Shown here: positions 1 through 36,435 of the stretch, one piece after another
How positions within the stretch are numbered: the first letter of the stretch is position 1
Layout: every line of letters starts with the position of its first letter
Notes under the pieces: model-generated
What the model was told of the DNA's origin: nothing
What the model saw: the letters and a program-made list of their open reading frames with translations, nothing else
The model's database searches: none
Position numbers and translations under genes: made by a program
Origin: Podarcis muralis
Lineage: Eukaryota
Direction of reading: 5' to 3'
DNA length: 64,000 nt
Assembly: GCF_964188315.1 (NCBI RefSeq)
Contig: NC_135655.1
Location: 82,894,001-82,958,000 of the forward strand

Positions 1-34
1 CAGCCCCTTTTCTGCTATTTCATTCTGGATGCAG

Positions 35-3000
35 ATGTGGAGAAGCGGCAGAACCCAGTGTGCAGTTTTGTGACCCCACTAGAGTGCAGTGATGTAGATG
101 TGCACCGCAAGCCCGAGGTGAGCAAAGGTTATTTGGGCCTTTCTTACTTAGTACAAAGAAGACAGACTATGCATTTCTGTATGTGACCCCTGGCTGCACC
201 TTTGTTTGGCAGGCTGTCATCATGGAAGGAAAGTACTGGAAACGCCAAGTTGGGGTGGTCATCAGGGAATATCACAAATGGAGGTTGTTTTCCTATACCC
301 AGGTAAGTGTCTTCTCCAGCAAGATGTGTTGTACTTCATATAGCTCCCCTTCACCCCTAGATGACATGTTCCACCCAAGCTCATACAGTCCTTTTTAGTG
401 TCAACCAAGGAAATCAGGTAGCCAATCCAGAAGCACCTTGGAACTCCATTGTAAGAAGGTGGATTTTCTAGATGCTTCTTGCCAGGCTACCATAGACTGC
501 ATCTGGTGGTTATGAGGTGATCTGGTACTAGACTGGCAAGGCTATGTTTCCATCTTACTCCGATGGGTGCCTTGGCCTATAGACTCATTTCCGCAGCTGC
601 CAAAGGCTCTCATTCTCTTGCCCTCTCTCATTTCCACAAAGACACACACTGGTCACCCAGCTATCCCTGTGTGATTATTGTGGTCTGCAATGGCTTGGCT
701 GAGGCCTCATGTGTTCATTGTTGTTGTAGCCGTAGTAGTAATAATAATAGTACATTATACCTAGCCCTTCCTCCCAAATGTGTCCAGGGCAGCAATAAGC
801 CAGATAGGATTTTATTTAGCTACCTATGGTTTTCCTCTAGCTAAGTATTGTAATTGTAGTACTTTCAGTGGCCTAATCCTAAACATTCTGTGCATTTTGT
901 TATAGGCTTCAAAGAAGATGGATAAACCCGTCTATGGTTCTGCTCAGGTGCTATTTTAATGCCTTGTTCCTATACTGCACCCTCCAGATTCCCCTTTCCC
1001 CATGGCAGAGGGTGGAATTAAAAAAGCTTGGGGGTTGTCTGCAGCCATTCAGCATTCCAGCCCCTCATTTGAGTTTGCCTAAAGTTGGAGTTCACAGCTC
1101 TTTCTCTTCCATTCTGGACAGGAAGTAGCTGATGATGTTCCAAGGGCAGAGCTGAAAACGGATGGAACAGATGCATGCCCCATGGACCTTGACCCCTTGC
1201 ATGACCTGGATGCACTTCTGGACACCTTCATTTCTAGCCGCAACCCTTATGGTGGCCCCAACCTCCGTGGCCTTGGTGAGAGGCCTTGCTTTGTGCTCAT
1301 TCCATCTATCTCTGGATCTGTCCCTTTCTACCAAGAAACCCTTTAAGTTTTCTCCACTGTCCCCAGAGGCTGGTACAGATGCCTCTAAAGGGTGGAGAGA
1401 GCTTTTGAAGTATCTCCATGTGAGAGCCAGTCCCTTGCTTGTGCACCAGAGAACAATTGCTATGGAACAAAGTAGTGAGCGAGTGATATTATTTCTCATT
1501 TTGTGTCTTCAGCTCACCAGGGAAATGCGGATATGATCCAGCCCACCCTGACCCAACTGCACCCCATCTTTGGGGAGGAGTTTATGGACTTGGACCCCAT
1601 TCAAGGTAACAGCAGAGGTTTTATGGCTGTACTTAGTGGTAAGGTGGTGCATCTCAAAGCTGAAAGACATCCTCTGAAGCACTTTATATGGCTTCTTAAG
1701 ACCACTTCAGACTGTGTTTAAATTATTTATCCATACTGTACACACTTAAAAGAAATGTGTTTGTTTATAGATGCTACTGGGTACATGCTGCTAGGATCTC
1801 CTGATCAGCAGCAATTCCCTTCAATGCTTATCTGTAAAAGAGCCCTTGGATTCCTCAGAATTGCAGCTTGCATATTTACTAAACTCACTGTTAGGGAGAA
1901 AACAGAACAAAATATGAAAAGCGTGTCATCAAGGCCCAAAAATCAAATAGAAACATGTATTATTATTATTTTAAGCCCACAAGTTAATCACCAGTTTTGA
2001 AAGATTAACTTGTGACCTCAAGAGTAAATAACATCTGAGTCTGGGTCACCAAAGTGGGCTGAAAGCTATCACTGGTGAGAGGAGACTATTTCCAACCTGA
2101 CATTGATGAAATTCTAGTTCACTCAAGGCCAGAGCAGAATGTTGCTGAGCAAACATGATACGTCCTGGTAAGACTAGACATTATTTAAATCAGTCAGCAT
2201 GCACATAAAAATCCTCTTTTGGGCATCCAATGCTCTAATAGAAGACTCATTCTCCATATAATCACATGCATACTGTGCTTTAGATATTGTTTGTCCCCTC
2301 TCCCATTTTCTGAATCAGCCAGGACAAATTCTTCAGAGCCACTGTATATCCCCTTTTCACAGGAAGAATAAAGTAGGCAAATTAATCTTGTATGAATTCT
2401 TAATTTGAAAAATCTTAAACTTACGAGTTTGTCATCTCAAAATTTCTACTTGCAAGTATAGCATCTACATATAGAGCCTATTTCAGTCTCATTCCTGCCA
2501 CTCCGTCACATAACTCTGAAATCAGCAGTCCCCACCTGCAGATTGCTCCTGTTCTTGACTTGAGTTTCTCTACCAGTTGACATATCCTGGATTTTAGGTC
2601 TCATCTTTCTTCGAAACCACTAACTGATGTCTGCTTGTATGGTGGATGTGAATGAATGAATGTTTATTATTATGACCAAACAGCCAGCATACTACCTGTA
2701 TGGTGAAATCCTGATGATTCCTTGCTTAATTGATTCAGACACACCAGCCAGTTATCTTCTACCAGTTGCTTTTTATCTCCTCCCAGCCTTTTAAATCTTT
2801 GCTTTCTTTTCACAGAATTCATCACTTCCTGTCGTTCTCAGCCCACGATCCAGGTAAGGATAATAAATTTATCTGATAGCTTACAAACTCCTTGGGCTTC
2901 TGCAGCCCCTGATGCTTATTGCAGATACTGGTCTGTGCTTGATTTTGATTTTGGAAAGGCAATAGCCTTTTCTCAGCATTGCAAAAAAACTGAGCAGTGG

Positions 3001-6000
3001 GAGTTCTCCCACTTGTATGATTTTCAGTGCAGACATCTCCAGCCTGGACTCAGGAGTTGTGTTTGATTTGCACTCTCTTCTCCCCCCTCTTAGGCTTCTG
3101 CAGTAACAGATGCTAGTGCTTTGAACCAGTGCAACCCAGATACACCTCTCATTGCCCCTGGGACCAAGGATCTCCCACCACCTGGAGACTCTCTCAATCC
3201 CATTCCCATCTCACTGGATGTGGAGCCGCCTGTACCTTTGAATGGACAGCAGACCTTCCTGCCATTCTTCCCCACCTCCCCACTGAGGATCAGCCCGCCG
3301 CCTGTCTCTCCCATCTTGCGCATGCAGCCTCAAACCACTTTGGTCTTCTCTGTCATCACGCACACAGGATCAGAAACAAATTCTCCGTCTGTATTTCGGG
3401 ACACTTTTGCTGTGCCAGTCTCTGCTCCTCCACCCAAGGATGGGAAATGCAGACACCTGCAACGGATTGCTCCAGCACCCTCCTCTAGCCAGCAGCCAGC
3501 CCTTCCCGGTGCTCCGCTCCCTTGCCTGCTTGCAACTGGTATGTCCCTGCAAGGACAGGCTCTCTGCAGGGGAAATTGAGGCATTGCTGACCTAGACTAC
3601 AATGCTTCTCTAGATCCATTTGGAGTATTAAGTCATACTGCAGAATTCTCCTTTCTTTTTGGTGGTTGTTTTCTCAAGCAAATCTCAACAGGACCAACTT
3701 TTGGAATCCCTAATTTAAACAACTGCATGCATTATTAGTGTTTATTTTGATATAATTATCTGAAGCTGGAGTTTAGCTTCATACTTGGGAATCACTGGAA
3801 GCAAAAGCATTTTTCCGTACTGGAAAAATAAAATATGTGGTCCAGGGAGATAGTTTTTTTGTGTTACTGCAGAATTTAAAAATGATATACATTGGTGCCT
3901 CGATTTTCGAATGTAATCCATTCCAGAAGACCGTTCGAGTTCTGAAACGTTCGAAAACCGAAAACTCAGTATGGAACTGAGTATGGAAAACTCAGTGCAG
4001 GAGCCGAGTGACATGTTCGACTTCTGAGGCGTGTTTGAAAACTGAAGCATTTATTTTTGGGTTTCCAGCGTTCAAAAACTGAAATGTTTGTCAATGGAGA
4101 CGTTCAAAAACCAAGGTACCACTGTATCTGACTTGAGCTGATAGGCATTACCTAACAGTGCCTGTATCTCCTTCAGTGGATTTAGGGTTTAGCCTTGCAG
4201 AAATTGTGTGTCAAAACTATGTACTGACTAGTCTGTAGAATAGCAAAATGGTTAGTCCACAGGTATTGGAGACGGATTTAAGGTGGCAATCTTACTTGCA
4301 ACTATAATACATATGTGTAAAGATGTCTGGGAGCTGCTGTTTGGAAAGGGAAAGAAAAAGTCCTCTATAGAGAGCCAGTGTGGTGTAGTGGTTAAGAGCA
4401 TTAGTCTCATAATCTGGGGAACCGGGTTCATGTCTCCGCTCCTCCACATGCAGCTGCTGGTTGACCTTGGGTCAGTCACACTTCTTTGAAGTCTCTCAGC
4501 CCCACACACCTCACAGAGTGTTTGTTGTGGGGGAGGAAGGGAAAGGAGAATGTTAGCCGCTTTGAGACTCCTGAAGGGGAGTGAAAGGCGGGATATCAAA
4601 TCCAAACTCTTCTTCTTCTATGCCCAAATTCCTGCATTGATCCCCTTCTTGCTTCTCTGGAGTGTAGTTAAGCTTTTTGTTTCGATGCAGCCAGCAGTTT
4701 GAGCCAGGTAAATCAAGCAAAACTACAAATGTCAACATTCGTCCAAATGCTTCATAGTTAAACAGAAAACCTTCAACTCATTAGTAGAAGTGAAATGACA
4801 GCTCATTAATATAACTCTGCATATTTACTAGCTTTTTAAAGTTATATTTTAATTTCTCTTAAATCTACAAGTGAGCACAGATTTTCTTGACCCAATTCAG
4901 AACAAGGCTCTTGTGCCTTGTAGCTTTTTTGAATGGGGAAAGTTGTCAAGAACTGTAGAGTCTTCTAATGTGCAAGCATTATGAAGAGAATCTGTAACTA
5001 TGAAACTTTCCTCTCTACCCCATTTAAAACTCACACATAAAGGTCCAGAATTCCTATCCTCGTGTGTCTGATGGCAAAGTGGGTACCAAACAGTTGGTGT
5101 CAGATTGGCTGGTGGTACATGCAGGAATTTTATGAGACGCTAATGGTTATGGGGAAACCAGGTCTAGGTATGTTTTGGAAGGGATCCCTGAGGCAAGAAT
5201 GCTCATTGGCCTCTCTGTTGGGTAGGGTGCCATGCATTTAAGTAGAGATCATTAGCCCGAATTGTATTTTCAGTTGTGGTGGGTGGGATTTCATAAAGCA
5301 GCAGACTCCTTTTCATTAAATAAATTCTGCCACATTCAAAAACTTGGTCTACTGGTGAGCAGCTAAACTGAAGCTGTGTAGTTACAAGGAGTGAGTGATG
5401 CTGCTTCAGCCAGCCAAGTTTTGTACATGCATTGGGGGTTAATACATAGAGGCTGGGAAAATAAGAACATCTCTTTCATCTCTAGGTCCTGCCCCACTGC
5501 CCCTCACTCCAGTCATGAACTCTGTGCAGGTAAGGATGCTCTCCTCTGCCACCTTCCTTCTGCGAGGCCTCCTATCTGTGTTCTGCTTTTTGCCTCCTTG
5601 GAGTTGACAGGCGGTGTATTTTTCTATCTTTCTGTTTGGCTGCTCTCTCTCTCTCTCAACCCTGCTTTTCCTCTCCCACAGGTGTGTGGCGTCCCAAAGC
5701 CCCCTGTGAATATGCTGAACTCATTCTCGGCAACGGTGAAGTCTCCTCCACTAGCATCTGCTGCTGCTTCCCCTGACACTGGTAAGCTGGCTCAGGAGGG
5801 TGCAAAGTCACTCGGCCTCTCTTCTTAGCAATATCTCATCTGCTTTCACTGGATTGGTCTATATGCCGTGCCAAAGTAGAAATTGAATACACACCTTAAG
5901 AAATTGAATACACACTCACCTACCCCAGTATTTTTGGGATTATTTCAGGTGCCAAAACCAAGGAGAGAGCTGAGGACAACACACACTGCAAACCCCAGGA

Positions 6001-7714
6001 AGTGGACAAATGCTGTACTGCCAAGGTAATAAGGATACCCACACCACTGTACCCCATCTTGTTGGCTTGAGTATTGTGGGAGAAGACATCTTTTCTCAAA
6101 GACGATAGCCAAAGGGGTAGTCGCCTGGCAGTGTCTCAAATCATGGCTTGATTGGCTCTTGCAGGGAAGTCGCAGATCAACACTTACCTCGGCTGACTAT
6201 GCCCGTCGTAGGGTCATCAGCTCCGGCTTCAACACTCTTGCCACTCTGGTGTTGACAGGACCTGATCAAAGCAGCACTAAGGTAAGCATCCCCCACTGTA
6301 CCAGAGGGTGGAAGGGCACATATTCTCTGCTGTTTGTCCAGTCCTCCCAATTTGCTTTGTGAACCATTCTTGTGGTCTTTGCCCTCCCAATCCATTTTAC
6401 ACCTTTACTCCACCCCCTCACCTCCCCAGTTCAGCAAAGCGATGCTCCTGCAGAAAAGTGCGGCACATGTGGAAAGACTGCAGCAAGAGCGCCGACAAGC
6501 TCAGGAGACAGTTGAAAGACTACGTGGGGAAATCAAAGAGCTGAGCACTGCCATTGAGTGAGTTGGGGGGCTGGCTTAAGGGGTTGAATTTTCATTGGAT
6601 CAGGGATACAAGTTAAAAGGTGAGAGGGGAACTCCTGTCAACAAGTTGCGGCTTTTCTCTTCCCTGCAGTGACTTTCAGCGCCAGCTTCCACCTACGGGA
6701 GCTCCTGTGCTGCCACCACAGTCAGATCAGGCTTCTCAACTCTATGAAGAGTATGTGCGCAAGCGCACCCTGCAGGACTGGCGCTTCTGGCTTGTATCCA
6801 CCACCAAGCATGTGGGATGGGATGGGACAGGTTAGAGTGCAAGAAAGCAAGCAAGGGGAGGTATTTGGCATGGCATCAGTGGCCTGCTGGGTGCTTAAGG
6901 GGAGCAGGGAGACTTGGCTGCATAGGCTCCTTAACCTCTTCCAACCTGCAGTTCAGCATGGTGATTAAGCCACTCTTTGAGAGCTACACCAGGACAGTGA
7001 GCACAGGCAACGTCAAGGAATTCTGCGACTCAGTGTTGAGCTGGTTGGAGCAGCACTGCACCCTGCCCATCTTGCGCCCTGGTATGGATCAACAGGGAAA
7101 TCTAGAAATGTCTTTCCCTTCACTGACCCATCTCTTTCCCCCCCATGGCTTTCAATGATCCTTGCCTACCTTCTGCTCTGAAATCTAGCACGTGCTTGTG
7201 TATCATTCACCCATCCTACTCCTGCTTGAAGTACTCTTACCTTCACACATAACTAAGAGAGTGGAACCATGGCTTACCAATTATACTCCACATTCCCGAT
7301 TCCCTTTTCATGCCTTGCTAAGTTACTAGACACAATTGCCCATCACTATGATCCTTTCCTTGCCCTGAAGCAAGATTATTGGGCACTGCCTTAAAGCAAG
7401 GCCCAGATGTGACCTTAGGAGTTACCTGGCTTTGTGGTGTTTAGGAAAAAATCTAGCTGGAGATGCCAGCTGTTCTCACAAGTCTTCTATTCCTGATACT
7501 TCCAGAAGACTTGAAAGGATTTTCTTTCTAGGAATTAGGAGAAAGTGTCTGCATTGAGTTCATTGTTACTGTTTTGGTTTTTTGTCCCACAGCTATCTCT
7601 GGCTCCCTCCTGCAGCTAAGCAAGATCACATCCATACTGACTCGGCCAACCCAGTTGCGTGAACAAGCCCTGCAAGCGGTAGCTGGCCCTCCACACTACA
7701 AGAGCAACAGCTAG
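35..7714 (+). CDS. Mondo-family (MLXIP/MondoA / MLXIPL/ChREBP-like) bHLH-ZIP transcription factor, 5'-partial, 15 coding exons in window
   Basis: Phase-consistent GT-AG exons: 35-117, 213-302, 906-947, 1122-1275, 1513-1605, 2816-2853, 3094-3538, 5486-5529, 5682-5781, 5949-6025, 6165-6281, 6430-6557, 6670-6793, 6952-7081, 7593-7714 (TAG). Peptides match Mondo motifs: PVCSFVTPL, EGKYWKRQVGVVIREYHKWR, GNADMIQP, SKAMLLQKS...LQQER, QLPPTG...RTLQDWRFWL, FSMVIKPLFES...WLEQHCTLPILRP. Small middle exons (906-947, 2816-2853) are less certain. Confidence 0.9.
3890..4124. mobile_element. Tc1/mariner (Tigger-like) MITE
   Basis: TIRs cattggtgcctcg...ccaaggtaccactg, flanked by TA on both sides. Confidence 0.75.
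4371..4620 (+). mobile_element. tRNA-derived squamate SINE with (TCT)n tail
   Basis: A-box tggtgtagtgg, B-box-like ggttcatgtc, body typical of squamate SINEs, tail tcttcttcttct. Confidence 0.7.
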
Positions 7715-10576
7715 GATGAAGACCAGGTCCAGTGCTATATGGACATCCTCACACACTACCAGGAAAGCCACCAACAGGGACCTCTATCTCAGGAATTCAT
7801 TTGCCATGCAACAAAGAAGCTTATGTTAGACAGTATTGGGGTTTAGATTGCCAGAGCAGAGAATCTCTGAGTATTCATTTTGGTGCTGGACACCTCTTAA
7901 TACTCTCTCTCTTTTTGCAGAACTTCAGGTAGTAGAGTGGGGGATGTGGGGAATAAGGCTAGAATGCAGATTTAATTGCCAGATGTAGGATGCCGGCCAT
8001 TGCTTTAGCCTCTTTCAGAACTGGGGTGAAAGATTAGCCGCATAATAATTAGTGTGGCCTCCATTTCCTGTGTTTTCCCACCAGAGGGCAGTGAAAGTGA
8101 TTCTTGCAGGCCTTCTCAATACATAGAGAAATACTTCCTCTGTATGATTCATGGCTTTGTTCCTCACTAAATTTGAGTGTTTGTGGCTAAGTGTTCGCCG
8201 CCCCCCCCCCCCAATATGGAGTATATGTTGGTGGCAGATTTTACCTATGCAACCATACCCATGAACCCTTTCAGGGGTGTAGAGGATCAATTTCTCCAAT
8301 CTTTCATTTTAGCTCGGAGACCTTTTGTAGGACTGTGTATTTTTTGTAGATCTGCTGAATTTTTACAGGGGGTGGAATCTGACTTCAGCTCAGTATTTGA
8401 TGGTACAATCCATTCTCCATCCCCTATGCTCATGTTTCTTTTCTCAAGTTACATATTAGCTTGGCGTGGAATCTGGAGTTTATTTATGCACAACACATCC
8501 TGTACTATGTTTGCCAAACTTTGTTCTAGGCTCCCAGCTAATGTACAACAACTCCTGACATCTGACCACACGGAGGTTGTGTGATGGGGAAGACACCACC
8601 TAACCACTGATAGGCAACCTGTTCTGTCTCCACTACTGTAACTGTATGATTGCATAACCTTCTGCACATGGCAATACCTCATTCAAAACTCCCAAGTTAG
8701 TAATAAAGCTAATGCCTACAGGAACAGGAGCCTAGCTGACTAAACTAGGGAAAAGGCTTTTTTACCATTTCCAGAGTTTTGAGTAATATCTGAAGTAGCT
8801 CTGGACATTTTGGCACCTGATAACAGAGAATCCAAATGTCAGACCTCTATCCCCCCACCCTCCCCCAGTTAACAGGTACAACCATTGAAACTAGCAGGAA
8901 CTGTGGGGGTGCATAGATCCTTTTCGTTCCTGATGGGTAAGCTCTACAGCTTTATCTTTCATTACCAGATGAAAGCCTTTGATGATTGGAAATTGTTCTA
9001 GCTGTTTGCATACAAGATATTCTAATACTTATGTGTCCAGAAATACACAAGAGAAAGAGTTGGAAGGGACCACGAGGATCATCTAGTCCAACCCCTTGCA
9101 ATGCAGGAATCTTTCACCCAACGTGGAGCTCGTTGTTGAGATCTGGCCTAGGTGTGTGTGGTTTTCTTTTCTTTTTACTGATTTATTATTTCTTCATTCT
9201 GCTACAGGCCCAAAATTTTCAGCAACAAAACCAAAAAAGCTATTCTATTATCATATAGGAATATAGTACTAGTACTAGTTTTCCATCAGCCACTTTAACC
9301 AAGGAATGGGCAACTGATTGATTCCCATGGGAGACTCACCTCAGTATACAAAATCTACTTCAAGCCCAGGTGTGCTTTCAGTCTGTGGGATGTTCTATGT
9401 CCCTTTTCTGTACCTCTTTTACTCATGAATGATGGTGGTGCTTTTTAAGAGTCTGCATTAGCTGAAGGTAACCACTCTGCATTTATGTGAAGCTAATGCA
9501 CAATACAGCTGACCCTTTCACTGTTCAGCATGGGAGGTTTACTGCAGAAAAGACTTCCAGTGCTTGCTCACCTAGATGTAATTACTGATAGCACTTTACT
9601 TCCTCCAGTCCTGGAGTTCTTTAGTTAACGTGTATTAAAAAAAGAATGAGAGCACACATGAATTATGAATTCTATCTTGAAAATATTCAGTGGACCATTT
9701 GAGATTTCTTGTGTTTCTATATCATTTTGTAATTTTAGCACTATTTCTGTATGTTCCACATATGTCACTAAAATACATTTGAGTAATCTTTAAGCGTTGT
9801 TTTCCTTTTTCACAATTCAGCAACTCCACTCTTTTCATACATGTAGGCAGCTGCCAGCCTTTGGCCAAACTGCAAAAGCACCTGCTGGGCTTTGCAGTTC
9901 CATCTTTCAAAAGCATCCCACAACCAACTTCTGCCCAGCCATCCCCACTGCTCAGCTGCTAAGGCCTAGGAATAGCCAAATAGCACTTCAGTTGGGGGGG
10001 CACACTATTCAGTTATTCATAGTGCTACTCAGCTGGGCAGCAGGCAGGGAGGTATGCAATAGATCTCTCTGTTGGTGATGGAGTTGAAGAGTCTGTACAT
10101 CTTCCTTGAGCAGGGTGGGGAGAATAATGTGTCACAAACTATTCAGATGTGGCCCCATTGACACATGTAGCTGTTAGATGTGCAAGTGTTTTATTTCTCA
10201 GTCAATTAACTTGAAAGCCAATTCAACAAACCAAGCAAGTTTGCAAAGAGCACACAACAGTAAAATAAACAGGATGCAGTGCTATACTAAGCTTGGCTTC
10301 CAAGAACTAGTCACTCAGTTTTGGGGATTCTTTTCCCCAGCACAGCATATTGATCCAAATCAATCCTCACCTTCATTTGACCTCAGCCTTCTAAGTACTC
10401 CCTAAGAAACTTTGATTAGGGCCAGAACCCATAAGTGGAGACCAGCTAGTAGACCTTGGCATCTTTTTAGGGCTGTTACATCCAAGCACAGAATCTCCAT
10501 GATAGGAATGAAGAAGTTATCCAATAATGTCAAAACTCAGGGACTTCTCAGGCTGAGATACCATCACATTTTCCTC

Positions 10577-13500
10577 TCAGAGGCAATATCCATGCCACAG
10601 GCTGCAAGGGAAGCATATGGAACATGGTTACTGTCTGGAAGAATCCTGACTTGGCATCTTACATGCCTCCTCCACCTACTGTGCCAAACAGCAGGCATGG
10701 GCAGCACAACAGCAGCAATGGTGCCTGTTTTACAGTCAGTATAAGCAAATGATCTGTGGGGAGGCCGCAGCTCTCAGCTTTCAATTCTAGGAAGTCATTG
10801 GCCAGAGAGAAGGTGGCGAGTAGGAAAAGGAATACATAGGAAGGAAGTGGGGGAAAGGATAAGTGGGAATACCTGCTACTGAATGTGTCCACATTTCTTA
10901 CATGTAAGCCTTTTTAACCCTTTAAAAATTTTGTTGGGCCCTGAGCTGCTTTCAGAGACTCTAGTGAGCATAAGAATGATGGACCAAAGTCATGTCTGGA
11001 TGTGAGACAAGGAAGCCCCATGTAAGCTACTCTGTGCTTCCTAAAGCAAGTAAACTGTAAATACATACTAAGGCTTCAGTGCTCAATGCTTCAAATGGAG
11101 TCATAGTAAATGCTGTGGGTTGGAAGTACAGCAAAGGTGAAGCAAAAATCTCATTCTTCAGCAAGGTTCTCACACAACATGCAAGCTGACTGCCAAATGT
11201 CAACTTCGTAAGCGCCTCTGCTTCTGACAATCTCAGCCACTAGGACTTCCTACCATGAAATGGCCAGGACGGTCTACCAAACACCCTGGCGGAAGCTGCA
11301 AATAAAGGAGAACTGCTTGTTCTTGGCTTCTGATCTCTTTCCTATTCTAATCCCCAATAGGTGAGTTATGGATTTTACTTGACCTTTGCTGAGCTCATAC
11401 TTCCATTTGCCCAGTTCATTTTGTGTATTACCTCTTGCGATACAGTTACTCCTCATTCATACAGTTGTGAATAAAAGATGCCCAGAGCTTAGCCAAATTA
11501 TCATGTGACCTGCTTAGCACTGCCATGGCCTTGCACCACCAAGCCCAACCTCAATAGTCTTCCTCTTCCAGATCTCATTACCCTAGAACAGATGCTTCCA
11601 TCCAGTGCCTGAGAAGGACAGAGCAGCTTTTCCATACTAACCTGTATGTAACGAGAGGGTCCTTGTTGTGCTTCTCTAGCAATTCCCGCACCATAGCAGG
11701 GGGGTTGAGACCCAGTAACTCTGCCCTCTCCCAGCGCTGCAAACGGGTGATTCCTGTCAGGGGGAAAAAGGTCTCTCAAAGTGGCCTCTTCAACACCAGT
11801 GATCTTCAACCACCTTCCTTGCAAGTCTATTGCCACTAGATGAATTTGAGAATTAACTAGGAGTCCCCTTTTCCTGGTATGCTGCCACTTACTATAATGT
11901 AACACTTTAACAGAGCATAGGGAGACTGGTCCCTGCCCCATGGAGGTATATCTAAAATTGTGCATGGAGGGAGGCAGGGAAAACCTATGCTTTCATTGCA
12001 GTGATGTGTACTTTGGCTCAGTTGTAGTAGCAGCATGATTGGAAGTTCTTACCTGTACAGGGGCCGTACTGCCAGCTGAGGTCAAATTGCTTTAGTGTCT
12101 CCAGCTGGTCTGGATGTGCAGCATCTTGGACTGCCTGCACTGTCACTGCGTCTGATCAGAGAGAAATGGATGATTATCACCGCATTATGGAGAGCTCTTG
12201 TATGAAATGAGTGTGAGGAAAGGGTTAACATAATTCTTTAGCCAACACCATTACATTAGTTATCTCTCGTTTGCTCTACAACCCGTATAACTCTGCCTGT
12301 GTTTTTTTAGCATCTCTTCACCCACACTTCGATCTCATGTAAATATGAACACACACAACATGTGCTGACTGAAGGAAACAACACTAACATAATTAATCCA
12401 TTGCTCATTGAGAATGCTCCTCTTCTGTAGAGGGTTCCCCACCTTTTGGGAGTACCGGTATATGTTTCATATAATTTTAAGGTAAAGGTAAAGGGACCCC
12501 TGACCATTAGGTCCAGTCGTGACCGACTCTGGGGTTGCAGCACTCATCTCGTTTTATTGGCTGAGGGAGCCAGCGTGTGGCCAGCATGACTAAGCCGCTT
12601 CTGGTGAACCAGAGCAGCGCACGGAAACGCCGTTTACCTTTCCGCTGGAGCAGTACCTATTTATCTACTTGCAGTTTGTCGTGCTTTTGAACTGCTAGGT
12701 TGGCAAGAGCAGAGACCGAGCAACGGGAGATCACCCCGTCGCGGGATTCAAACCGCCGAACTTCTGATCGGCAAGTCCTAGGCTCTGTGGTTTAACCCAC
12801 AGCGCCACCCGTGTGCTTTTTACTTCCTGCTAAATGATTTTTCAAATACTTCACTTTCACAGAAATCCTGTGCAATAATTCATCACCACTGTCCTATAGC
12901 AACTTGCTAGCTAAGCAAGTGGCAAGTCTATTACTGATTAACCCTTGCTTGCATAACCGTGGTATTGAGTTATGTGCAGCTCCAACAAACAACCTAGGAG
13001 ACGACCAAAGCAAGAACATGCAGGGAAAGAGTTTGCAAGAACTGATGTCTTGCAAATCTCAAGGGCCACTCCATCTACTCCCCACCTAAAGCTGCTGCAT
13101 TTTCACCCTTCCCCCCTGTTCAGATTATCTACCTATTGGTAGCAGAGGTATCACCTTGTCGTGGTGAGTGGGCTTGCACATGCCTATGACCCTTGTGAGT
13201 GAAGCTGTCAGGAGTCTCGTACTCCCAACAGGGTCACCCAAGGTGGCAGGGTCAAAGTGGAGGAGCTAGACAAAGAATGATCCAAGAAGTCCTCAACAAC
13301 AGAACAGGTGGAAGATAACAAGTGGCATGTTACATCGGCTGTGAAGGCGGATGAAGGCTGCAGCAGATAAGATAGAGCCTTACCGCGAAGACTGCTTTGG
13401 TCAGCGTGCACTGATCTACACACATGAAACAAATTCACGCACAAGCATCTTCCAAAAACCCATACCAAACACAAACCCATAAAACTCCCATGGCGATCGG

Positions 13501-14331
13501 CAAATGGTAATATTATCTCCCAAAAATTTGACACATCACTTGGGAAGACAGGTGAACTAATGCCGGTGTACTGGAAGAAGCAAAGATCACCAGTGCTGAA
13601 GCAATGATTCTTCAGCATCAACTACATTGGACTGGTCATGTGCGGACGCCTGATTATCGTCTTCCAAAGCAACTACTCCATTCCGGACTTAAAATGGAAA
13701 GTGTAATGCTGGTGATCAAAAAAAGAGGTTTAAAGACACCCTCAAGGCAATTTTTAAAAAACGTAGTATAAAAACTGACAATTGGGAAACACTGGCCTGT
13801 GAGCGCTCCAATTGGAGAACAGCCTTTAGCAAAGGTGTCATGGACTTTGAAGATGCTTGAATTCAGGATGAAAGGGAGAAACACAGTAAGAGGAAGACAC
13901 ATTTGGCAAACCCTCACTATGATCAACTCCCACCTAGAAACCTATGTTTCCATTGTGGAAGGATGTGTGGATCCAGAATTGGCCTCACAGTCACTTACGG
14001 ACTCACTGTTAAGATTGTGTTCATGGAAGACAATCTTACTCGGCTACGCCAAAGAAGAAAAAGGATTTACGGGAGCATGACCAAATCGGTTGCACTGGGC
14101 ACGGAGACTTGGGGGTGCCACAGGGAACGCTGAAAGTATGATTTAAAATGAAGCGAGAGAGGTGAGGGGCGCTGAATTTTGGTGTTGCACCAGGTGCTGC
14201 TGAAATTCACGCATCCCTTCCTAGCAATACTCACCATGGAGTGGGCTCTGAGCCTTCTTTGTTTCCTTACTGTCTCTTTTCCTCTTCTTCACCACTTGGA
14301 AGGAGTCTGTGATTAGCCGTTTCCTGCCCAT
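10577..14331 (-). CDS. POLD4: DNA polymerase delta subunit 4 (p12), 110 aa, 4 exons
   Basis: Minus-strand exons 14235-14331, 12053-12151, 11642-11753, 10577-10601 with canonical splice sites give MGRKRLITDSFQVVKKRKRDSKETKKAQSPLHDAVTVQAVQDAAHPDQLETLKQFDLSWQYGPCTGITRLQRWERAELLGLNPPAMVRELLEKHNKDPLVTYSLWHGYCL*. It has the N-terminal PIP-degron KRLITDSF and the QFDLxWQYGPCTGITRLQRW signature. Candidate AATAAA on minus strand at 10190-10195. Confidence 0.96.
12481..12812 (-). mobile_element. Sauria SINE in POLD4 intron 1
   Basis: ggtaaaggtaaaggg tail (reverse of (ACCTTT)n), characteristic body ccagagcagcgcacggaaacgccgtttacc, and reversed tRNA-like head. Confidence 0.85.
13140..14050 (+). mobile_element. 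Internally deleted, decayed RTE-clade LINE
   Basis: RTE-type 5' end (caccttgtcgtggtgagtgggcttg) joined to a decayed ORF 3' end (SAEAMILQHQLHWTGHV..PDYRLPKQLL; C-x2-C cgrmcgsrig). Boundaries approximate. Confidence 0.6.
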
Positions 14332-14849
14332 GGTTCCATGTGGCAAGGCTCACAGAGCATTAACAGGTTGCTCTAAACAAGGAGCTGAGGAGAAGCAGAG
14401 ACTGTTAGACAAGCTGCTGACTAGGACCTTCAATCTCCAAACCTACTGTCCTAATACCAGCTACCAGTCAAAACGACTTTATTTCTGGGAGAAAAAACTA
14501 CGCAAAAAGGTGTTTGGACTCTCCTAGCTGGTGGCCTTCTCCCATGTGGAAGTTCTTTGCCTCCAAACACATTAAAGAGCCTAAGTTTATGTAAAGGAGA
14601 AGGAAGTATATTCTGTGCATGGTCAGAGACCCTACACCTTTGCATTTTCCAGGACTGTGTGTCGATACTGAAAAATTCTCAGCCCGACTCCAAGGCAGGG
14701 CAAAGTCCTTTCCCTGAGCGGGAGGCTATTCCTCTGTCAAGAAGTGCGTCAGAATCCCTTGCGGTCCCCATCCTGGACTCTGCTTCCTCCTGAAGCCTTC
14801 AAAGCAATGCACGACTCGTTCCTCTCTTCATCCAGACCTCGAAAACAGA

Positions 14850-15960
14850 CTCCCCGGTTCCTGCTCTAACCACTGGTTACTCTCCCCCACACCCAAGAGA
14901 CCTGGGGATCAAAACGATCCCCTCCCTCTCACCCCCCTGAACAGATAGATCCCTCTTGTTCCTTCTATAGCAGCCGCCTTCCAGCCTTTCCGAGTCGCCC
15001 CCTGGAGTTCCCTCCCCTAATGCCCAAACGCGGAAGGGCAGGGAGGATCTCTCTCCTCCTGTCACCCCGGAAAAAAGGCTCCGCGACATCTCTAGAAGCA
15101 GCTGAGTCCTTACCAGCAGCTGCGCCGGGGGCTGTCGGTGCTCCCCCCAATGTCTCTTGGGGGCGATGCGAGGACTGCGGGGTGGGAGCTGCTGGCACAA
15201 ACCGGTCCCGATTCTCCCCCCACCCCCGGAGCCGTTCTGGGTCTCCCCGGAGCAGCCGCTTGTTGTTTTTGCACGGATCGGCCAATGGCAGCGCTGCTTT
15301 CGCTTTGCGTTCAAGGCGGCGGCAGCGGAGGCAGCGCCCCTGGCGGCCGACCCGGGGAAGGACGGCGGCTTAAGGCGTCGCAGGTGGCGCCTCTTGCTCT
15401 TCGGGGCCCCGCTATTCTCCCGGCTGTTTCCTGCGCTCCCCGCACTCCATCCCTCAGTCCCGCATCTATGCGCTCTCTTCCTTTTGCTCGAGAGATTTTG
15501 CCGCGATCAGAGGAGCAGAAGCCACAGAACCGCCAGAGGTAGCAACGAGACGCCTGCCGATTAATAGTAAGGCATGGGACATGTCCGGGCCAAAACTCTG
15601 ATCCGGAGACGGACCAAGAAAGGAGCGGGGCGTCCAAACGAGGAAACGCCGCCATAGCAACTTGCCTGCTGCGCTAGCTTAGCCGCTGTTTGGGCAAGGA
15701 GTGGGGAACCGGAGCAGAAAATAAATGCTTTACCTGGAGACTGTTTTTCCCAAAATCACTGAACTAGAGAGCAGCTTTGTCTTCTCCAGCAGCAGTGGTC
15801 CTCTTCCTTACAGCTCCCTCGATCCCTGCTCCTCCGCGATCTCCTTCAGCACCACCTGGTGGGAGAGGCTTGCAGCCGGCAGAAGCTTCCCCTGAAGCAA
15901 GCACTCATCTCTCGTTCTATGGAAGCAGACTCGCCTCTTTTTCATTCGGAGAATCGGCCG
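14850..15960. promoter_or_regulatory. CpG island / probable POLD4 promoter and 5' UTR
   Basis: Dense CpG and GC content 0.5-1.6 kb upstream of the POLD4 ATG on the minus strand; CCAAT near 15282; RFX-like half site ccatagcaac at 15652-15661. The ORFs called here are low-complexity artefacts. Confidence 0.8.
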
Positions 15961-17054
15961 ATTACTCTGGATTATGCGGATCACATCCCACTGGGCCCGC
16001 GGCTGCAACCCAAGAAACAATTTTGTGGAGTGAATGAACCATTTAGTATAACATATACATAACACTACCATCTCTCACTCCCCGAAGCAAAGCACCCCGA
16101 CACACCAAGCTGGACACGACACACACAGTGGGTGGGTGTTCAGCTTTAGTTTCTCATTCCTAATCTGCTTTTATCAACAGGAAGACCACAATAGAGTAGC
16201 TGAAAGCATGGTGGAGCATCAGTAGCTCATATAAGACCATGTTAGAGCACTGAGCACTCCTATAAGCTCAGGAGCTGTGCCTTCTTGCACCTGTGTTGAA
16301 AATAAATCCCTAATTTCAGGTTGTGTAGACACACCAACATTTAAAGCCTATTCACACATACCAAGAATCCTGGGAACTTTAGTTTACCCATTGCAAAATT
16401 TGCTCAATATATTGTTGTGCATAGCATATAACTTTTGAGCAGAATAATAAAATACAAAGTTGATTGGAAAACAGAAGAATGCATAGCTTCGCAAGCTGCT
16501 GTGCATAAACAACAGTTTAAGCTGCCAAATATGTTTTGTCTGGTTCTTCAACAGTGGCAAATACTGATAAATTAATGTAGAATACACAGTGAACTAGTTC
16601 ACACATAACTTTAAACCACAGTTATGGTTCCTAAGAGTGGAAGCAGACCTGAGTAACAGCTTTCAAAGATAAGGAAGCTTCTACTGGCTTCTTTCAAAAT
16701 CAATTGCATTAAGCAAAGGATGAGTTCAGGAGTCACAACTGGGAAGCGTTAACCCCCCCCCCCCACACACACACATGTTAGCTGAAAATTTCCTCCATGC
16801 TGCTAGGCTTCAAAAAAGTGTCTATTGGTTGCAGTAGAAGGTATGAGGATTTTACGATCCTGTGCCAGGGTTTGGAATTTGTGTTTCAAACGTGAGTGCG
16901 GGTTCTGGGTCAAATTCTGGTTCATTTAAAAATCTTGGACTTTGGGGGACAGCCTGGAGCAGGAGTTCATTTCTACAGATAAATATAGTGACTGTTTCAC
17001 AGAACAACAATTACAAACAGCATACAGGCGTCTTTTATTTTTATGTTTCCTTAA

Positions 17055-19760: not shown

Positions 19761-22432
19761 ATGCAGATCCTGACCTGCCCCTCCAAGTTGAAGCTGCTTG
19801 AGACTGTGCTGCAACGGCACCTGCCCCAGGCTCTTCCGGTAATCCTCGCTCCTCTACTGCCGCCCCCTTTCCCCATCAATTTAACAATTCCTACCATTTT
19901 CTCATGGAGCAACATGGATTTTTGCTCTAGCTAACTCCCCTCCTTTCCTTGGCAGGCCAACGGAGCTGTGATGCACATCAACCGCAGAAATCCAGCTCAG
20001 CACGAAGTGGTGGTGGACTCTTGGCCAGAGTTTAAAGTTGTCCTTACCCGCCCACGTAAGGAGGTGAGAATTCTCCCATAACCCGTCACCTGAACCTGTG
20101 AGAAAAAGCCCAAGAGACGGTAGCTTCTGAGGCTGGAAAACCATTGGAGACGCACTCCATGGTGGTGCCGGGCCTGTTCCTGCCTCCTTTGCCTTTTCTT
20201 GCTCCTGCTCTTAATAAGACCCAACCAACCCCCGCTACCTGCGTCCTGTCAATAGCCAAATGACTGTGCCACGTTCTGCAGGTAGTGAAAGACAAGCAGG
20301 ATTGCTACTCCAACTTTCATACTGCTTTCTACCGGGATGTAGACGCCTGGCGAACACTCTTGGAAAATGCAGAAGCAATTGACTGGGGAAAGGCCTTCCA
20401 GCTTAAAGGTAAAGCTCCTCACCCTCTACTTATTCCATTCCTGGAATAGCAAAACTAGCTTCCTGGTAAGGTGATGAGACATTGAGAGGTACAAAGGAAG
20501 TGGCTCTGTGTGAGATGGAAAATGGGTGGGTAGTTTGAAGGGCAAAGGCTGAGTTAAGAGCAGAGGATTGGAGTGATGTGAGCTAGAAGCACATTAGCAA
20601 GCTGGGAAGAGAGAAAGAGAGCAATGTTTGATTTCTGTTTAAATAGAAGGCTGTGAGCATGGGAGAAGCGAGTCCCTCTTGGGGTGTTAATACTGCTCAG
20701 GTTGTGTATATGTGTAAATAAACCACATGCCACAGAGACACCACAGTCTCTGCTATACCTCATTCCAAAGGAAACACCAACCCTGGGTAATCGCCTGGAA
20801 TCCTGGAATTTCGCACTGCTCAAAGACTGGCTGGCACACAACACTATAATCATACAATACCAAGAGAGGTGCAGACACCGAGCATTAGAAAATATAATTC
20901 CTCACCCCCAGGTTGACATCTCATTTTCATTGTGTGCAGGGCTCCAAGATGGCTTATATGAAGCTGCCAGAGAGATTGCAGCGTCCAGACGTGTCAGTCT
21001 TAAGCCATACTTCTACCAGACAACCCTGCATCCTGACCCATCTGCCTACTGTCAGAGCCGGTTAGTGAGTGCATATTATTTGTGGACTGAAAATAACAAC
21101 AGCAAATATTCAGTATTCATTGGACTGTTTTCTGTTCTGGAAAAGGGCTGACTAGCTCAACACCAGCAATTTCTGCTTCTGTTTTCATCAGAATTCTCAG
21201 ATGTTCCTCCGCATAATCAGTAAGCAGTGAATTGTAACCCAACACCAAGTTCCACATCTGATTGCTATGTCCTGGCTTAGTTCTGCCCACAAAACAGGAG
21301 GAGAAAGTCACAGAGTCACTTCCTGAGCTTTTTCTCTTGCAACTTCCTGTTCATTTGTTCCAGTTGATGGTGATGAAATACTTTTTAAGCTTTCAGTCTG
21401 CTCAACCGCCATCACTGTCGTGCAGCGGTAAATTAATCATAGCAGAGTCTTCTTTATAAACAGAATAAAACTTTACTGAAGAAAATAAATTTGTTCAGAA
21501 ACAGCATAGTTAAAGAGCATACACAGAGTGCTCATAGCAGCTATCTGACTCTTCACAGAGGTCCTGGAGCCACTGTGTCTACCTCAGCTTTACATGGCAA
21601 CAACAACAGCACTGTTCACAGACTACTCCATACACAATCCATACAGCTCTCTGACTGAGGCTCCTAGAGAGGCTGGCTACTTTTACAGAGAGAATGAGTC
21701 TTCACCCAAGATGAGTCACGAGTCACAGTGACTTAGCAGTTTGCTGTTAGCAGGCTTAGGCTTGAATGATTGTGTAGGCCTTACCAGTGGTGTAGCGTGG
21801 GTTGTCAGCACCTGGGGCAAGGCAAGTAATTTGTGCCCCCTAACCTGTGGATTTGCGCCCCTAACCCATGGATTTGCCCTAACCCCAGATGTTGCGCCCG
21901 GTGCGGCCGGCCCCCCCTGCACCCCCCACGCTACGCCACTGGGCCTTACTGCTTCTTCTGCTCTCAAGAACCTTTGTCTCATGACAATCACTGCCTCTCT
22001 TTGTATTTCAGGTACAGAAGTGGCCTCTTCCACTTCGGCAGCCTAAACTCCTCCCATTCAGCTCTGCTCAATGAAAACTGGAGTGTTGGGCGCAATGATT
22101 GGAGCCTACGCTATCTGGACAGCCTGATCCACAACTTCCCTAGTGCTTGCCTCCTGGACAAAGAAGAACAGCTGGTTTCCTGGTGCCTTAGTGATCCAAT
22201 GGGTTGTTTGACGCATGGCTACACTCTCCCTCAGTACCGAGGTCAAGGCTGTGTGGCAGCTGTGACAAGGGCAACAGCTGTGAAGTTGCACGCATGTGGG
22301 TTCCCCCTGTATGGTGGGGTTTTGGCAGACAACCAGCCTAGCAAACAGGCATTGAAGCGGCAAGGATTCCACATCTTGCCCTTGACGAATTATGCGCTTT
22401 TCTTTACACCAAGCCTTCAGCCCACAAGATAA
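19761..22432 (+). CDS. GLYATL3-like: Glycine N-acyltransferase-like 3-type protein G1a, 284 aa, intact
   Basis: Exons 19761-19838, 19956-20063, 20282-20408, 20940-21060, 22012-22432 (78/108/127/121/421 nt, GLYAT-family phases). [14 protein letters not shown]..., [38 protein letters not shown]. Confidence 0.93.
21785..21941. mobile_element. hAT (Tip100-like) MITE in G1a intron 4, same family as 17936-18091
   Basis: TIR cagtgg(t/c)gtagcgtggg; 8-bp TSD ggccttac at 21777-21784 and 21942-21949. Confidence 0.9.
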
Positions 22433-29000: not shown

Positions 29001-29085
29001 TGTCCAAATGCAGAGGTTGCTGGAATATATGGGCTCCCAGAGATTATCTGAATTGTGTCATCTCTGCATACATTCTTCAGTTTAG
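26061..29085 (+). CDS. GLYATL3-like: Glycine N-acyltransferase-like 3-type protein G2a, 278 aa, intact
   Basis: Exons 26061-26138, 26746-26853, 27513-27639, 28212-28332, 28683-29085. [14 protein letters not shown]..., [30 protein letters not shown] probable 5' UTR intron at 25733-26000 is conserved in G2b and G3. Confidence 0.92.
26980..27322. mobile_element. hAT MITE in G2a intron 2
   Basis: 8-bp TSD ttaggagg at 26972-26979 and 27323-27330; degenerate CAG(G/A)G termini; absent from the G2b and G3 paralogous introns. Confidence 0.8.
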
Positions 29086-36274: not shown

Positions 36275-36435
36275 TACACTGCAACCTTTCGCTCCCAGAA
36301 CTGTGCACTTCAGGGTTAGTTAACATCATGGCCATATTTAGTAGCCTGCTCTGGACATATTTAAAATTAAATTGAAATACATAGCAAAGCAGCTATTGCA
36401 GCTACTTTTCATACCCGATAAGAATTAAGGTTAAA

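What the first reader, a model, noticed from the sequence alone, without database searches (positions are those of the whole stretch)
35..7714. Candidate third Mondo/ChREBP paralog (ohnolog) next to POLD4
Seen: an intact Mondo-type exon architecture, but the peptides differ strongly from human MLXIP and MLXIPL as I recall them (e.g. KWRLFSYTQ vs KWRIYYKKR), and the neighbour is POLD4. Known: human MLXIP is at 12q24 and MLXIPL at 7q11. POLD4 (11q13) and the GLYAT cluster (11q12) lie in a segment paralogous to 12q24 (PPP1CA/PPP1CC, SSH3/SSH1, CORO1B/CORO1C). Inference: this may be a whole-genome-duplication paralog lost in mammals but kept in squamates, i.e. an uncharacterised branch of the glucose-sensing MLX network.
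Basis: partly seen in the sequence, partly recalled or inferred. Interest (0 to 1): 0.8.

Follow-up and report, generated by a model that had tools for sequence, protein, structure and literature searches.

The report
Third Mondo/ChREBP-family gene in lizard
This stretch holds most of an intact, expressed third relative of the sugar-sensing regulators MondoA and ChREBP; lungfish, salamanders, caecilians, reptiles and ratite birds keep it and mammals lack it, although the papers I could read say vertebrates have only two.

Summary

- **Gene structure:** Window 35-7714 (+) carries the last 15 coding exons of a Mondo-type bHLH-zipper gene. All exons have AG/GT borders and none has a stop. The translation is 100% identical to RefSeq 'MLX-interacting protein-like' of Podarcis muralis.
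- **Activity:** Stranded RNA reads show all nine exon junctions in the stretch laid. dN/dS against P. raffonei is 0.115.
- **Phylogeny:** A mixture-model ML tree gives three fully supported jawed-vertebrate clades: MLXIP, MLXIPL and this third one. The third clade holds lungfish, caecilians, salamanders, tuatara, squamates, turtles, crocodiles and ratites. AU tests reject nesting it inside MLXIP or MLXIPL.
- **Separate canonical genes:** P. muralis has its own canonical ChREBP, and Anolis has a canonical MLXIP.
- **Position:** The gene lies between SSH3 and POLD4 in lizard and emu.
- **Protein:** The N-terminal glucose-sensing module, the HLH-zipper and the C-terminal dimerisation domain are conserved. 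In all tetrapod copies the basic region has lost the E-box-reading His and has Asp in place of Glu. Lungfish keep both.
- **Inferred only:** MLX partnering and altered or weakened DNA binding are inferred, not tested.

Databases annotate the gene automatically, but the papers found describe only two Mondo paralogues.

The parts
35..117 (+). coding exon (4th of the gene; first in window), end of MCR II / VEKRQNPVCSFVTPLE...
   Evidence: AG/GT borders and frame. Same alignment columns as a ChREBP exon of Podarcis. 100% match to P0506.
213..302 (+). coding exon, MCR III (EGKYWKRQVGVVIREYHKWRLFSYTQ)
906..947 (+). small coding exon (ASKKMDKPVYGSAQ)
   Evidence: Found by the gap against the P. raffonei protein. 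AG/GT borders conserved in P. raffonei.
1122..1275 (+). coding exon, MCR IV region
1513..1605 (+). coding exon, MCR V (NADMIQPTLTQLHP)
2816..2853 (+). small coding exon
   Evidence: Spliced RNA reads join 2853 to 3094.
3094..3538 (+). large proline-rich central exon
   Evidence: RNA depth 11-20 and the joint 3538|5486.
5486..5529 (+). coding exon
   Evidence: Joints 3538|5486 and 5529|5682.
5682..5781 (+). coding exon
   Evidence: Joints skipping 152 and 167 bases.
5949..6025 (+). coding exon before the bHLH
   Evidence: Joint 6025|6165.
6165..6281 (+). bHLH exon: remodelled basic region (SRRSTLTSADYARRRVIS), helix 1 and loop
   Evidence: Alignment with 52 Mondo proteins. Pfam HLH matches only profile positions 12-53. 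Joint 6281|6430.
6430..6557 (+). helix 2 and leucine zipper exon
6670..6793 (+). start of the C-terminal dimerisation/cytoplasmic-localisation domain (…RTLQDWRFWL)
   Evidence: Joints 6557|6670 and 6793|6952.
6952..7081 (+). core exon of the C-terminal domain (FSMVIKPLFESY…LPILRP)
   Evidence: 201 Mondo-family hits in 1.84 billion proteins. Same columns as a ChREBP exon.
7593..7714 (+). last coding exon with TAG stop at 7712-7714
   Evidence: Joint 7081|7593. 100% match to the end of P0506.
7715..8600 (+). 3' untranslated region (runs at least this far)
   Evidence: Continuous stranded RNA depth 3-19 up to the end of the stretch laid.

Best explanation
Window 35-7714 is the 3' four-fifths of a functional protein-coding gene of Podarcis muralis. 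It encodes a third jawed-vertebrate member of the Mondo family, the bHLH-zipper, MLX-partnered sugar sensors whose two known members are MondoA (MLXIP) and ChREBP (MLXIPL).

Shown here:
- The gene is intact, spliced as modelled, transcribed from the + strand and under purifying selection.
- Its orthologues form a separate clade that follows the species tree from lungfish through amphibians to reptiles and ratite birds.
- The clade branches outside both the MLXIP and the MLXIPL clades.
- The gene sits between SSH3 and POLD4.
- Species that carry it also carry canonical MLXIP and MLXIPL.

Inferred:
- It is a paralogue from the early vertebrate genome duplications. Its relation to MLXIP and MLXIPL is unresolved; sister to MLXIP is not rejected. 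It was later lost in mammals, and no copy was seen in frogs, ray-finned fishes, sharks or most neognath birds.
- The protein keeps the N-terminal glucose-sensing module, including the 14-3-3-binding helix, so it is probably held and released by metabolites in the way ChREBP and MondoA are.
- It keeps the HLH-zipper and the C-terminal dimerisation domain, so it probably pairs with MLX.
- In all tetrapod copies the basic region has lost the His and carries Asp for the Glu that read the E-box. The dimer should therefore contact carbohydrate-response elements weakly or with a changed preference. That would make it a modulator or competitor in the MLX network rather than a plain third activator.
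For: - Gene model: 15 exons, all AG/GT, no stop; 100% identical to XP_028595351.2 residues 164-757.
- Expression: nine predicted junctions seen in three stranded RNA-seq runs, with the RNA on the + strand.
- Selection: 24 synonymous against 9 nonsynonymous differences from P. raffonei, dN/dS 0.115; exons 98.2% identical against about 96% for introns.
- Phylogeny: IQ-TREE LG+C20 PMSF on 53 proteins gives the three clades at 100/100 each, and the internal order of the third clade follows the species tree. An N-terminal-only tree gives the same three clades.
- AU tests: the third clade joined with sarcopterygian MLXIP is rejected at p 2e-10, with bony-vertebrate MLXIP at p 1e-4, and with sarcopterygian MLXIPL at p 1e-68.
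- Lungfish members: P0233 and Protopterus P0406.
- Synteny: SSH3, then the gene, then POLD4 in P. raffonei; ANKRD13D-SSH3-gene-POLD4-GLYAT-CLCF1 in emu.
- Canonical ChREBP in P. muralis and P. raffonei lies on another chromosome beside a syntaxin gene and a DnaJ gene.
- Canonical MLXIP in Anolis comes from the sequence file of PMC4766361.
- Regulatory module: residues 105-218 match the solved ChREBP N-terminus in complex with 14-3-3 (5F74) at E 1.5e-61. The 14-3-3-binding helix is 19/21 identical. MCR I-V align across the family.
- Basic region: HISAEQKRRFNIK in every MLXIP, MLXIPL, lamprey and invertebrate Mondo examined. About 74 tetrapod third-clade proteins have x-[AST]-D-x-x-R-R instead. 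Lungfish keep H..E..RR.
- Pfam HLH: 23 bits over profile positions 12-53 only, against 40-50 bits over 1-53 for canonical proteins and for the lungfish copy.
Against: - No member of the clade was found in cartilaginous fishes, ray-finned fishes or coelacanth. A genome-duplication origin therefore needs several independent losses.
- The clade sits on a long stem, and the AU test shares the model's susceptibility to long-branch attraction.
- The branching order of the three clades is unresolved: sister to MLXIP is not rejected, p 0.46.
- MLX binding, metabolite sensing and DNA binding were not tested.
- Asp in place of Glu could still allow some DNA contact.
- The tissues of the RNA runs are unknown and depth is modest.
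Confidence: 0.8

Rival explanations
1. It is a lineage-specific duplicate of MLXIP. It arose in the lobe-finned ancestor of lungfish and tetrapods, landed between SSH3 and POLD4, and then evolved fast. Its position outside the MLXIP clade would be a long-branch artefact.
For: Members were found only in lungfish and tetrapods. It scores higher against MLXIP than against MLXIPL. It shares the YDFDTV...TCQTY motif with MLXIP. Its branches are two to three times longer than those of MLXIP.
Against: AU tests reject it inside sarcopterygian MLXIP (p 2e-10) and inside bony-vertebrate MLXIP (p 1e-4). The conserved N-terminal half alone still gives a 99-supported MLXIP clade that excludes it. The shared motif is ancestral, since lamprey and amphioxus have it too. 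The short-branched lungfish copy does not move the clade. Its flanking genes ANKRD13D and SSH3 have, from my knowledge of the human map, paralogues ANKRD13A and SSH1 on the MLXIP chromosome arm. Block duplication would produce that pattern; a single-gene copy would not.
Confidence: 0.15
2. It is simply the diverged, translocated orthologue of MLXIP or MLXIPL in squamates.
For: NCBI names some copies 'MLX-interacting protein' without '-like', for example in Pogona, Anolis carolinensis and Chelonia mydas.
Against: P. muralis and P. raffonei have a canonical ChREBP in the canonical neighbourhood. Anolis has a canonical MLXIP with HISAEQKRRFNIK. Chelonia mydas, Lissotriton helveticus, Microcaecilia unicolor and Struthio camelus each have all three genes on different contigs. 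The tree and AU tests also speak against it.
Confidence: 0.01
3. It is a decaying or non-functional relic; the odd basic region would be a sign of relaxed constraint.
For: The basic region departs from a motif that is otherwise invariant from brachiopods to mammals. The clade evolves faster than its paralogues. The one neognath copy found, from the king vulture, is flagged low quality.
Against: Open reading frames are intact in more than 70 proteins from six major groups. dN/dS is 0.115. The transcript is correctly spliced. The replacement Asp and the following Arg-Arg are fixed across all tetrapod copies, which indicates constraint on the new state.
Confidence: 0.04

Closest known systems
MLXIP (MondoA)
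   Same: Same domain order: MCR I-V glucose-sensing module, proline-rich centre, HLH-zipper and C-terminal dimerisation domain. It shares the YDFDTV...TCQTY block after MCR I. MLXIP is the best-scoring paralogue (about 40% identity over the full length).
   Different: It forms a separate clade at a different locus (SSH3-POLD4). It is shorter, about 757 aa against about 915. It has an acidic/glycine-rich insert after MCR I. In tetrapods the basic region has lost His and has Asp for Glu. It evolves two to three times faster.
MLXIPL (ChREBP / MondoB)
   Same: Intron positions coincide where compared. Residues 105-218 are about 75% identical to the solved ChREBP N-terminus bound to 14-3-3 (5F74), and the 14-3-3-binding helix is 19/21 identical. 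The loop length of the HLH is like that of ChREBP.
   Different: It forms a separate clade (p 1e-68 against nesting). The same genome holds a canonical ChREBP elsewhere. The basic region differs. No experimental data exist for it.
HLH proteins without a working basic region (Id / Emc type dominant negatives)
   Same: It keeps an HLH dimerisation surface while lacking the canonical E-box-reading His and Glu. That is the logic by which Id proteins titrate partners. This resemblance comes from established knowledge of the bHLH family and was not tested here.
   Different: The basic region is still present and still rich in Arg, with an RR pair conserved. The protein is a large Mondo protein with sensing and zipper domains, not a minimal HLH. 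Whether it blocks or redirects DNA binding is unknown.

Membership tests
Mondo family (MLX-interacting bHLH-zipper sugar sensors) | N-terminal Mondo conserved regions MCR I-V (glucose-sensing module) | tested here: met
   MCR III-V are encoded in the window. MCR I-II lie in the upstream exons of the same protein (P0506). The alignment is; the match to the solved ChREBP N-terminus has E 1.5e-61.
Mondo family (MLX-interacting bHLH-zipper sugar sensors) | 14-3-3-binding alpha-2 helix (RDKIRLNNAIWRAWYIQYV) | tested here: met
   19 of 21 residues are identical to the peptide in 4GNT/6YGJ. The helix is encoded just upstream of the window.
Mondo family (MLX-interacting bHLH-zipper sugar sensors) | Helix-loop-helix plus leucine zipper | tested here: met
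   Pfam HLH scores 23.3 bits against a cut-off of 20.7 for the window's protein. The zipper aligns across the family.
Mondo family (MLX-interacting bHLH-zipper sugar sensors) | Canonical basic region H-x3-E-x2-RR (HISAEQKRRFNIK), invariant in all other Mondo proteins examined | tested here: not met
   The window encodes LTSADYARRRVIS. All tetrapod third-clade proteins have Asp for Glu and no His, whereas lungfish copies keep both. The Pfam match starts only at profile position 12.
Mondo family (MLX-interacting bHLH-zipper sugar sensors) | C-terminal dimerisation and cytoplasmic-localisation domain shared with MLX | tested here: met
   Exon 6952-7080 finds 201 family members at E up to 1e-3, at 50-88% identity. 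The full C-terminus aligns.
Mondo family (MLX-interacting bHLH-zipper sugar sensors) | Heterodimerises with MLX and binds carbohydrate-response elements | not testable with these tools
DNA binding needs an experiment.
Mondo family (MLX-interacting bHLH-zipper sugar sensors) | Shared exon-intron architecture | tested here: met
   Exon borders fall in identical alignment columns in the window gene and in Podarcis ChREBP for three exons, and within a few columns for two more.
MLXIP orthologue group | Nests within the MLXIP clade | tested here: not met
   The MLXIP clade is 100/100 without it. AU gives p 2e-10 and 1e-4 against nesting.
MLXIPL orthologue group | Nests within the MLXIPL clade and is the only such gene in the genome | tested here: not met
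   AU gives p 1e-68. A canonical ChREBP exists in P. muralis and P. raffonei on another chromosome.

The most novel reading that the evidence does not exclude
Non-mammalian tetrapods run a three-member Mondo network. The third member senses sugar metabolites and pairs with MLX. Its basic region was remodelled in the tetrapod stem and has stayed fixed since (His lost, Glu to Asp). It would act either as a built-in, nutrient-gated antagonist that titrates MLX away from ChREBP and MondoA, or as a factor with a DNA target different from the carbohydrate-response element. Mammals, and apparently frogs, would then have simplified the network by losing it.
Probability: 0.35. Interest if true: 0.75.

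Novelty: new variant of a known kind. Interest (0 to 1): 0.62.

Why it matters
- **Gap in the literature:** ChREBP and MondoA are central to glucose sensing, lipogenesis and diabetes research. The evolutionary accounts I could read (PMC3177325, PMC4766361, PMC7003098) state that vertebrates have exactly two Mondo genes, and they build arguments on that about dosage balance with the single MLX partner.
- **What a third gene changes:** A conserved, expressed paralogue in lungfish, two amphibian orders, all reptile orders and ratites changes that picture. It also adds a case of an ancient duplicate lost in mammals.
- **A natural experiment:** The copy keeps the sensing and dimerisation parts, but the DNA-reading residues were replaced and then frozen.
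- **Models:** It can be studied in tractable animals that carry it, namely axolotl and Anolis.
- **Practical point:** It warns annotators that 'MLX-interacting protein(-like)' names in reptile and amphibian records cover two different genes.

Tried and rejected
- **Pfam and PDB on single exons:** these gave little. HLH scored 13 bits on the bHLH exon alone, and the C-terminal exon found no solved structure.
- **First tree attempt:** it timed out in MAFFT --auto. I realigned with faster settings.
- **Synteny look-ups:** the Struthio, Chelonia and Rhinatrema copies had no record. The Ambystoma and Microcaecilia genes are too long for DNA to be returned. There is therefore no amphibian synteny.
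- **Lungfish transcript:** its run accessions gave no paper. It is assigned to lungfish only through 73% identity to Protopterus.
- **Squamate MLXIP:** none appeared in the three capped protein searches, because birds and turtles fill the lists. I used the Anolis Mlxip coding sequence in the supplement of PMC4766361 instead. MLXIP of P. muralis itself was not seen.
- **Runs guessed as RNA:** X1-X14, held as contigs, contain intron words and are probably DNA, so they were not used.
- **Complex prediction with MLX:** not sent, because no MLX sequence turned up among 550 fetched proteins.
- **Branching order of the three clades:** it could not be resolved.
- **Literature:** five searches for a described third paralogue found none. 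The library lacks most subscription journals, so this is not proof of absence.
Full report
**What is in the window.** Reading 1-7900 shows short open frames with Mondo-type peptides separated by introns. I assembled 14 exons by hand. All have AG acceptors and GT donors, their phases fit, and the last ends in TAG at 7712-7714. Comparison with the closest database protein exposed one more 42-base exon at 906-947. The final 15-exon model gives 594 residues without a stop. It is 100% identical to residues 164-757 of XP_028595351.2, 'MLX-interacting protein-like [Podarcis muralis]'. The window is therefore wall-lizard DNA. It starts in the intron after the third coding exon, and my model equals the RefSeq model. 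Where they can be compared, exon borders fall in the same alignment columns as in the canonical ChREBP gene of Podarcis.

**Neighbours.** On the minus strand, 11632-11751 and 12051-12152 encode the conserved core of DNA polymerase delta subunit 4 (Pfam PF04081, E 1.4e-10 and 1e-3). A CpG-rich stretch lies at 14-16 kb. Five plus-strand last exons of glycine N-acyltransferase type follow between 21.8 and 54.4 kb.

**Is the gene alive?**
- Three stranded bulk RNA-seq runs of the same species label, laid on 2700-8600, cover the exons and not the introns.
- They show spliced reads for all nine predicted junctions from 2853|3094 to 7081|7593.
- First mates lie on the minus strand, which means the RNA is plus-strand. 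Depth continues through at least 900 bases of 3' UTR.
- Against P. raffonei the exons differ at 33 of 1787 sites, 24 synonymous and 9 nonsynonymous, giving dN/dS 0.115. Surrounding non-coding DNA is about 96% identical.
- The gene is transcribed, correctly spliced and under purifying selection.

**Who else has it?**
- A profile-free search of 1.84 billion representatives with the C-terminal exon found 201 Mondo-family proteins.
- The nearest full-length ones are an agamid lizard, axolotl and green turtle.
- A word-index search with the agamid protein listed orthologues at 530 to 1460 bits. They come from about 20 squamates, tuatara, about 15 turtles, a crocodile, ostrich and emu, three caecilians and two salamanders. 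Scores then drop to about 465 bits for canonical MLXIP.
- A 3.9-kb transcript contig from two RNA runs, 73% identical to a Protopterus annectens protein, adds lungfish.
- No mammal, frog, teleost, gar, sturgeon, bichir, coelacanth or shark protein fell in this group.
- A low-quality king-vulture protein is the only neognath bird.

**Is it just MLXIP or MLXIPL?** No.
- Canonical ChREBP exists in P. muralis and P. raffonei on a 45-Mb chromosome, flanked by a syntaxin gene and a DnaJ gene. The third gene lies on a 137-139-Mb chromosome.
- The Anolis Mlxip coding sequence published with PMC4766361 encodes the canonical EYHKWRTYFKKR and KHISAEQKRRFNIK, so squamates also have MLXIP.
- Chelonia mydas, Lissotriton helveticus, Microcaecilia unicolor and Struthio camelus each have all three genes on different contigs.

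**Phylogeny.**
- I built a careful IQ-TREE analysis (LG+C20+F+G4 by PMSF, 53 proteins, 705 columns) rooted on amphioxus and protostome Mondo proteins.
- It recovers three jawed-vertebrate clades, each at 100/100. MLXIP and MLXIPL both include sharks, ray-finned fish, coelacanth and tetrapods. The third clade includes lungfish and tetrapods.
- Inside the third clade the order follows the species tree.
- Constraining the third clade to join sarcopterygian MLXIP costs 79.5 log-likelihood units (AU p 2e-10).
- Joining bony-vertebrate MLXIP costs 59.7 units (p 1e-4).
- Joining sarcopterygian MLXIPL costs 87.6 units (p 1e-68).
- A tree from the well-conserved N-terminal 251 columns alone, which leaves out the odd bHLH, gives the same three clades at 98-99.
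- The order among the three is unresolved. Third plus MLXIP costs only 0.33 units (p 0.46).

**Synteny.**
- In P. raffonei the order is slingshot phosphatase (SSH3-type), then this gene, then POLD4.
- In emu it is ANKRD13D, SSH3, this gene, POLD4, a GLYAT-like gene, CLCF1.
- From my knowledge of the human map, ANKRD13D-SSH3-POLD4-CLCF1 is the order at 11q13.2 with nothing coding between SSH3 and POLD4. ANKRD13A and SSH1 lie on 12q24 with MLXIP.
I could not test it with the tools, and I did not examine human sequence.

**Protein anatomy.**
- The N-terminal module is strongly conserved. Residues 105-218 match the solved ChREBP fragment bound to 14-3-3 (5F74) at E 1.5e-61. The 14-3-3-binding helix is 19/21 identical. 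MCR I-V align with all family members.
- The zipper and the C-terminal dimerisation domain are conserved.
- The basic region is not. Every MLXIP, MLXIPL, lamprey, amphioxus and protostome sequence in the alignment has HISAEQKRRFNIK or a one-residue variant. The window encodes LTSADYARRRVIS.
- Among about 74 tetrapod third-clade proteins the Glu is always Asp and the His is Phe, Leu, Ser or Pro, while the Arg-Arg pair is kept. The lungfish copy still has H..E..RR.
- Pfam's HLH model matches the window's protein at 23 bits from profile position 12 onward. The lungfish copy and the canonical proteins score 40-50 bits from position 1.
- The change therefore happened on the tetrapod stem and has been held since.

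**How it most likely works.**
- Shown: an intact, expressed, constrained Mondo-family protein with a conserved sensing module, 14-3-3 helix, HLH-zipper and C-terminal domain.
- Inferred from the established biology of ChREBP and MondoA: cytoplasmic retention by 14-3-3, release by sugar phosphates, and pairing with MLX.
- Inferred from general bHLH knowledge (the His, Glu and Arg of the basic helix read CACGTG-type half-sites): the tetrapod protein contacts E-box/ChoRE DNA weakly or with changed preference.
- It would then modulate or compete within the MLX network rather than act as a plain third activator. I put this functional reading at about one in three.
- An earlier first-stage note on 6165-6281 (s1-152537) made the same observation. 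I confirmed the sequence part across the family, but not the antagonist idea.

[quoted passage not shown] Singh and Irwin 2016 (PMC4766361) found single-copy Mlxip and Mlxipl and no further duplicates. Erives and Fritzsch 2019 (PMC7003098) describe Mondo to MondoA + MondoB in stem gnathostomes. Five searches found no paper describing a third paralogue. The gene is, however, predicted automatically in RefSeq and UniProt for dozens of species, under names that confuse it with MLXIP or MLXIPL. I therefore class it as a new variant of a known kind: known to databases, uncharacterised, and with a distinctive basic region.

**Limits.**
- No fish copy outside lungfish was found, so an early-duplication origin implies several losses.
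- Long-branch effects cannot be fully excluded.
- Absence in mammals, frogs and most neognaths rests on annotated proteins only.
- MLXIP of P. muralis itself was not retrieved.
- The tissues of the RNA runs are hidden.
- No binding or DNA-contact test was possible.

Noticed in passing
window 11632-11751 (-), 12051-12152 (-), CpG-rich 14000-16000: POLD4 lies tail-to-tail with the Mondo gene. Two exons hit Pfam DNA_pol_delta_4, and the likely promoter is the GC-rich stretch at 14-16 kb. In the P. raffonei record the POLD4 gene range is drawn overlapping the Mondo gene on the opposite strand, but almost no antisense reads lie over the Mondo exons.
   Followed up: partly
window 21833-22432, 28531-29085, 35768-36274, 47888-48391, 53940-54431 (+): Five tandem last exons of glycine N-acyltransferase type (Pfam Gly_acyl_tr_N and Gly_acyl_tr_C), of two sequence subtypes, with duplicated flanking blocks. 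Emu has a single GLYAT-like gene in the same place, between POLD4 and CLCF1.
   Followed up: partly
window 4276-4669: An interspersed repeat in the long intron collects 150-230x RNA reads on both strands. These reads have many loose ends and variant letters, so they come from copies elsewhere and not from this gene.
   Followed up: no
window 1-36 and upstream: A 621-residue database isoform of this genome (P0510, names withheld) starts MPSGGPGICSLYCRLQPLFCYFILDAD. It reads from the intron straight into the exon at 35. It would lack MCR I-II, as the constitutively active beta isoform of ChREBP does. It was not checked with reads because the window begins there.
   Followed up: no
window 36402-38829: Reverse-transcriptase and C-terminal ORF fragments of a LINE-type retroelement lie on both strands between GLYAT copies.
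   Followed up: no
window 53274-53882 (+): A GC-rich ORF with poly-Gln, poly-Pro and poly-Ala runs lies just upstream of the fifth GLYAT exon. Another first-stage note (s1-152538) reads it as a captured RANBP9 N-terminus.
   Followed up: no
window 3180, 5707, 5746, 5756, 6206, 6772, 7701 and others: All RNA reads differ from the window at about 40 fixed positions in 5.9 kb. The RNA samples therefore come from another population or lineage under the same species label.
   Followed up: no
L001 943-3573 (Logan contig of SRR6291289): A lungfish-like transcript encodes an 876-residue third-clade protein with a canonical basic region. It is the least derived member of the clade and useful as an outgroup for the tetrapod change.
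   Followed up: partly
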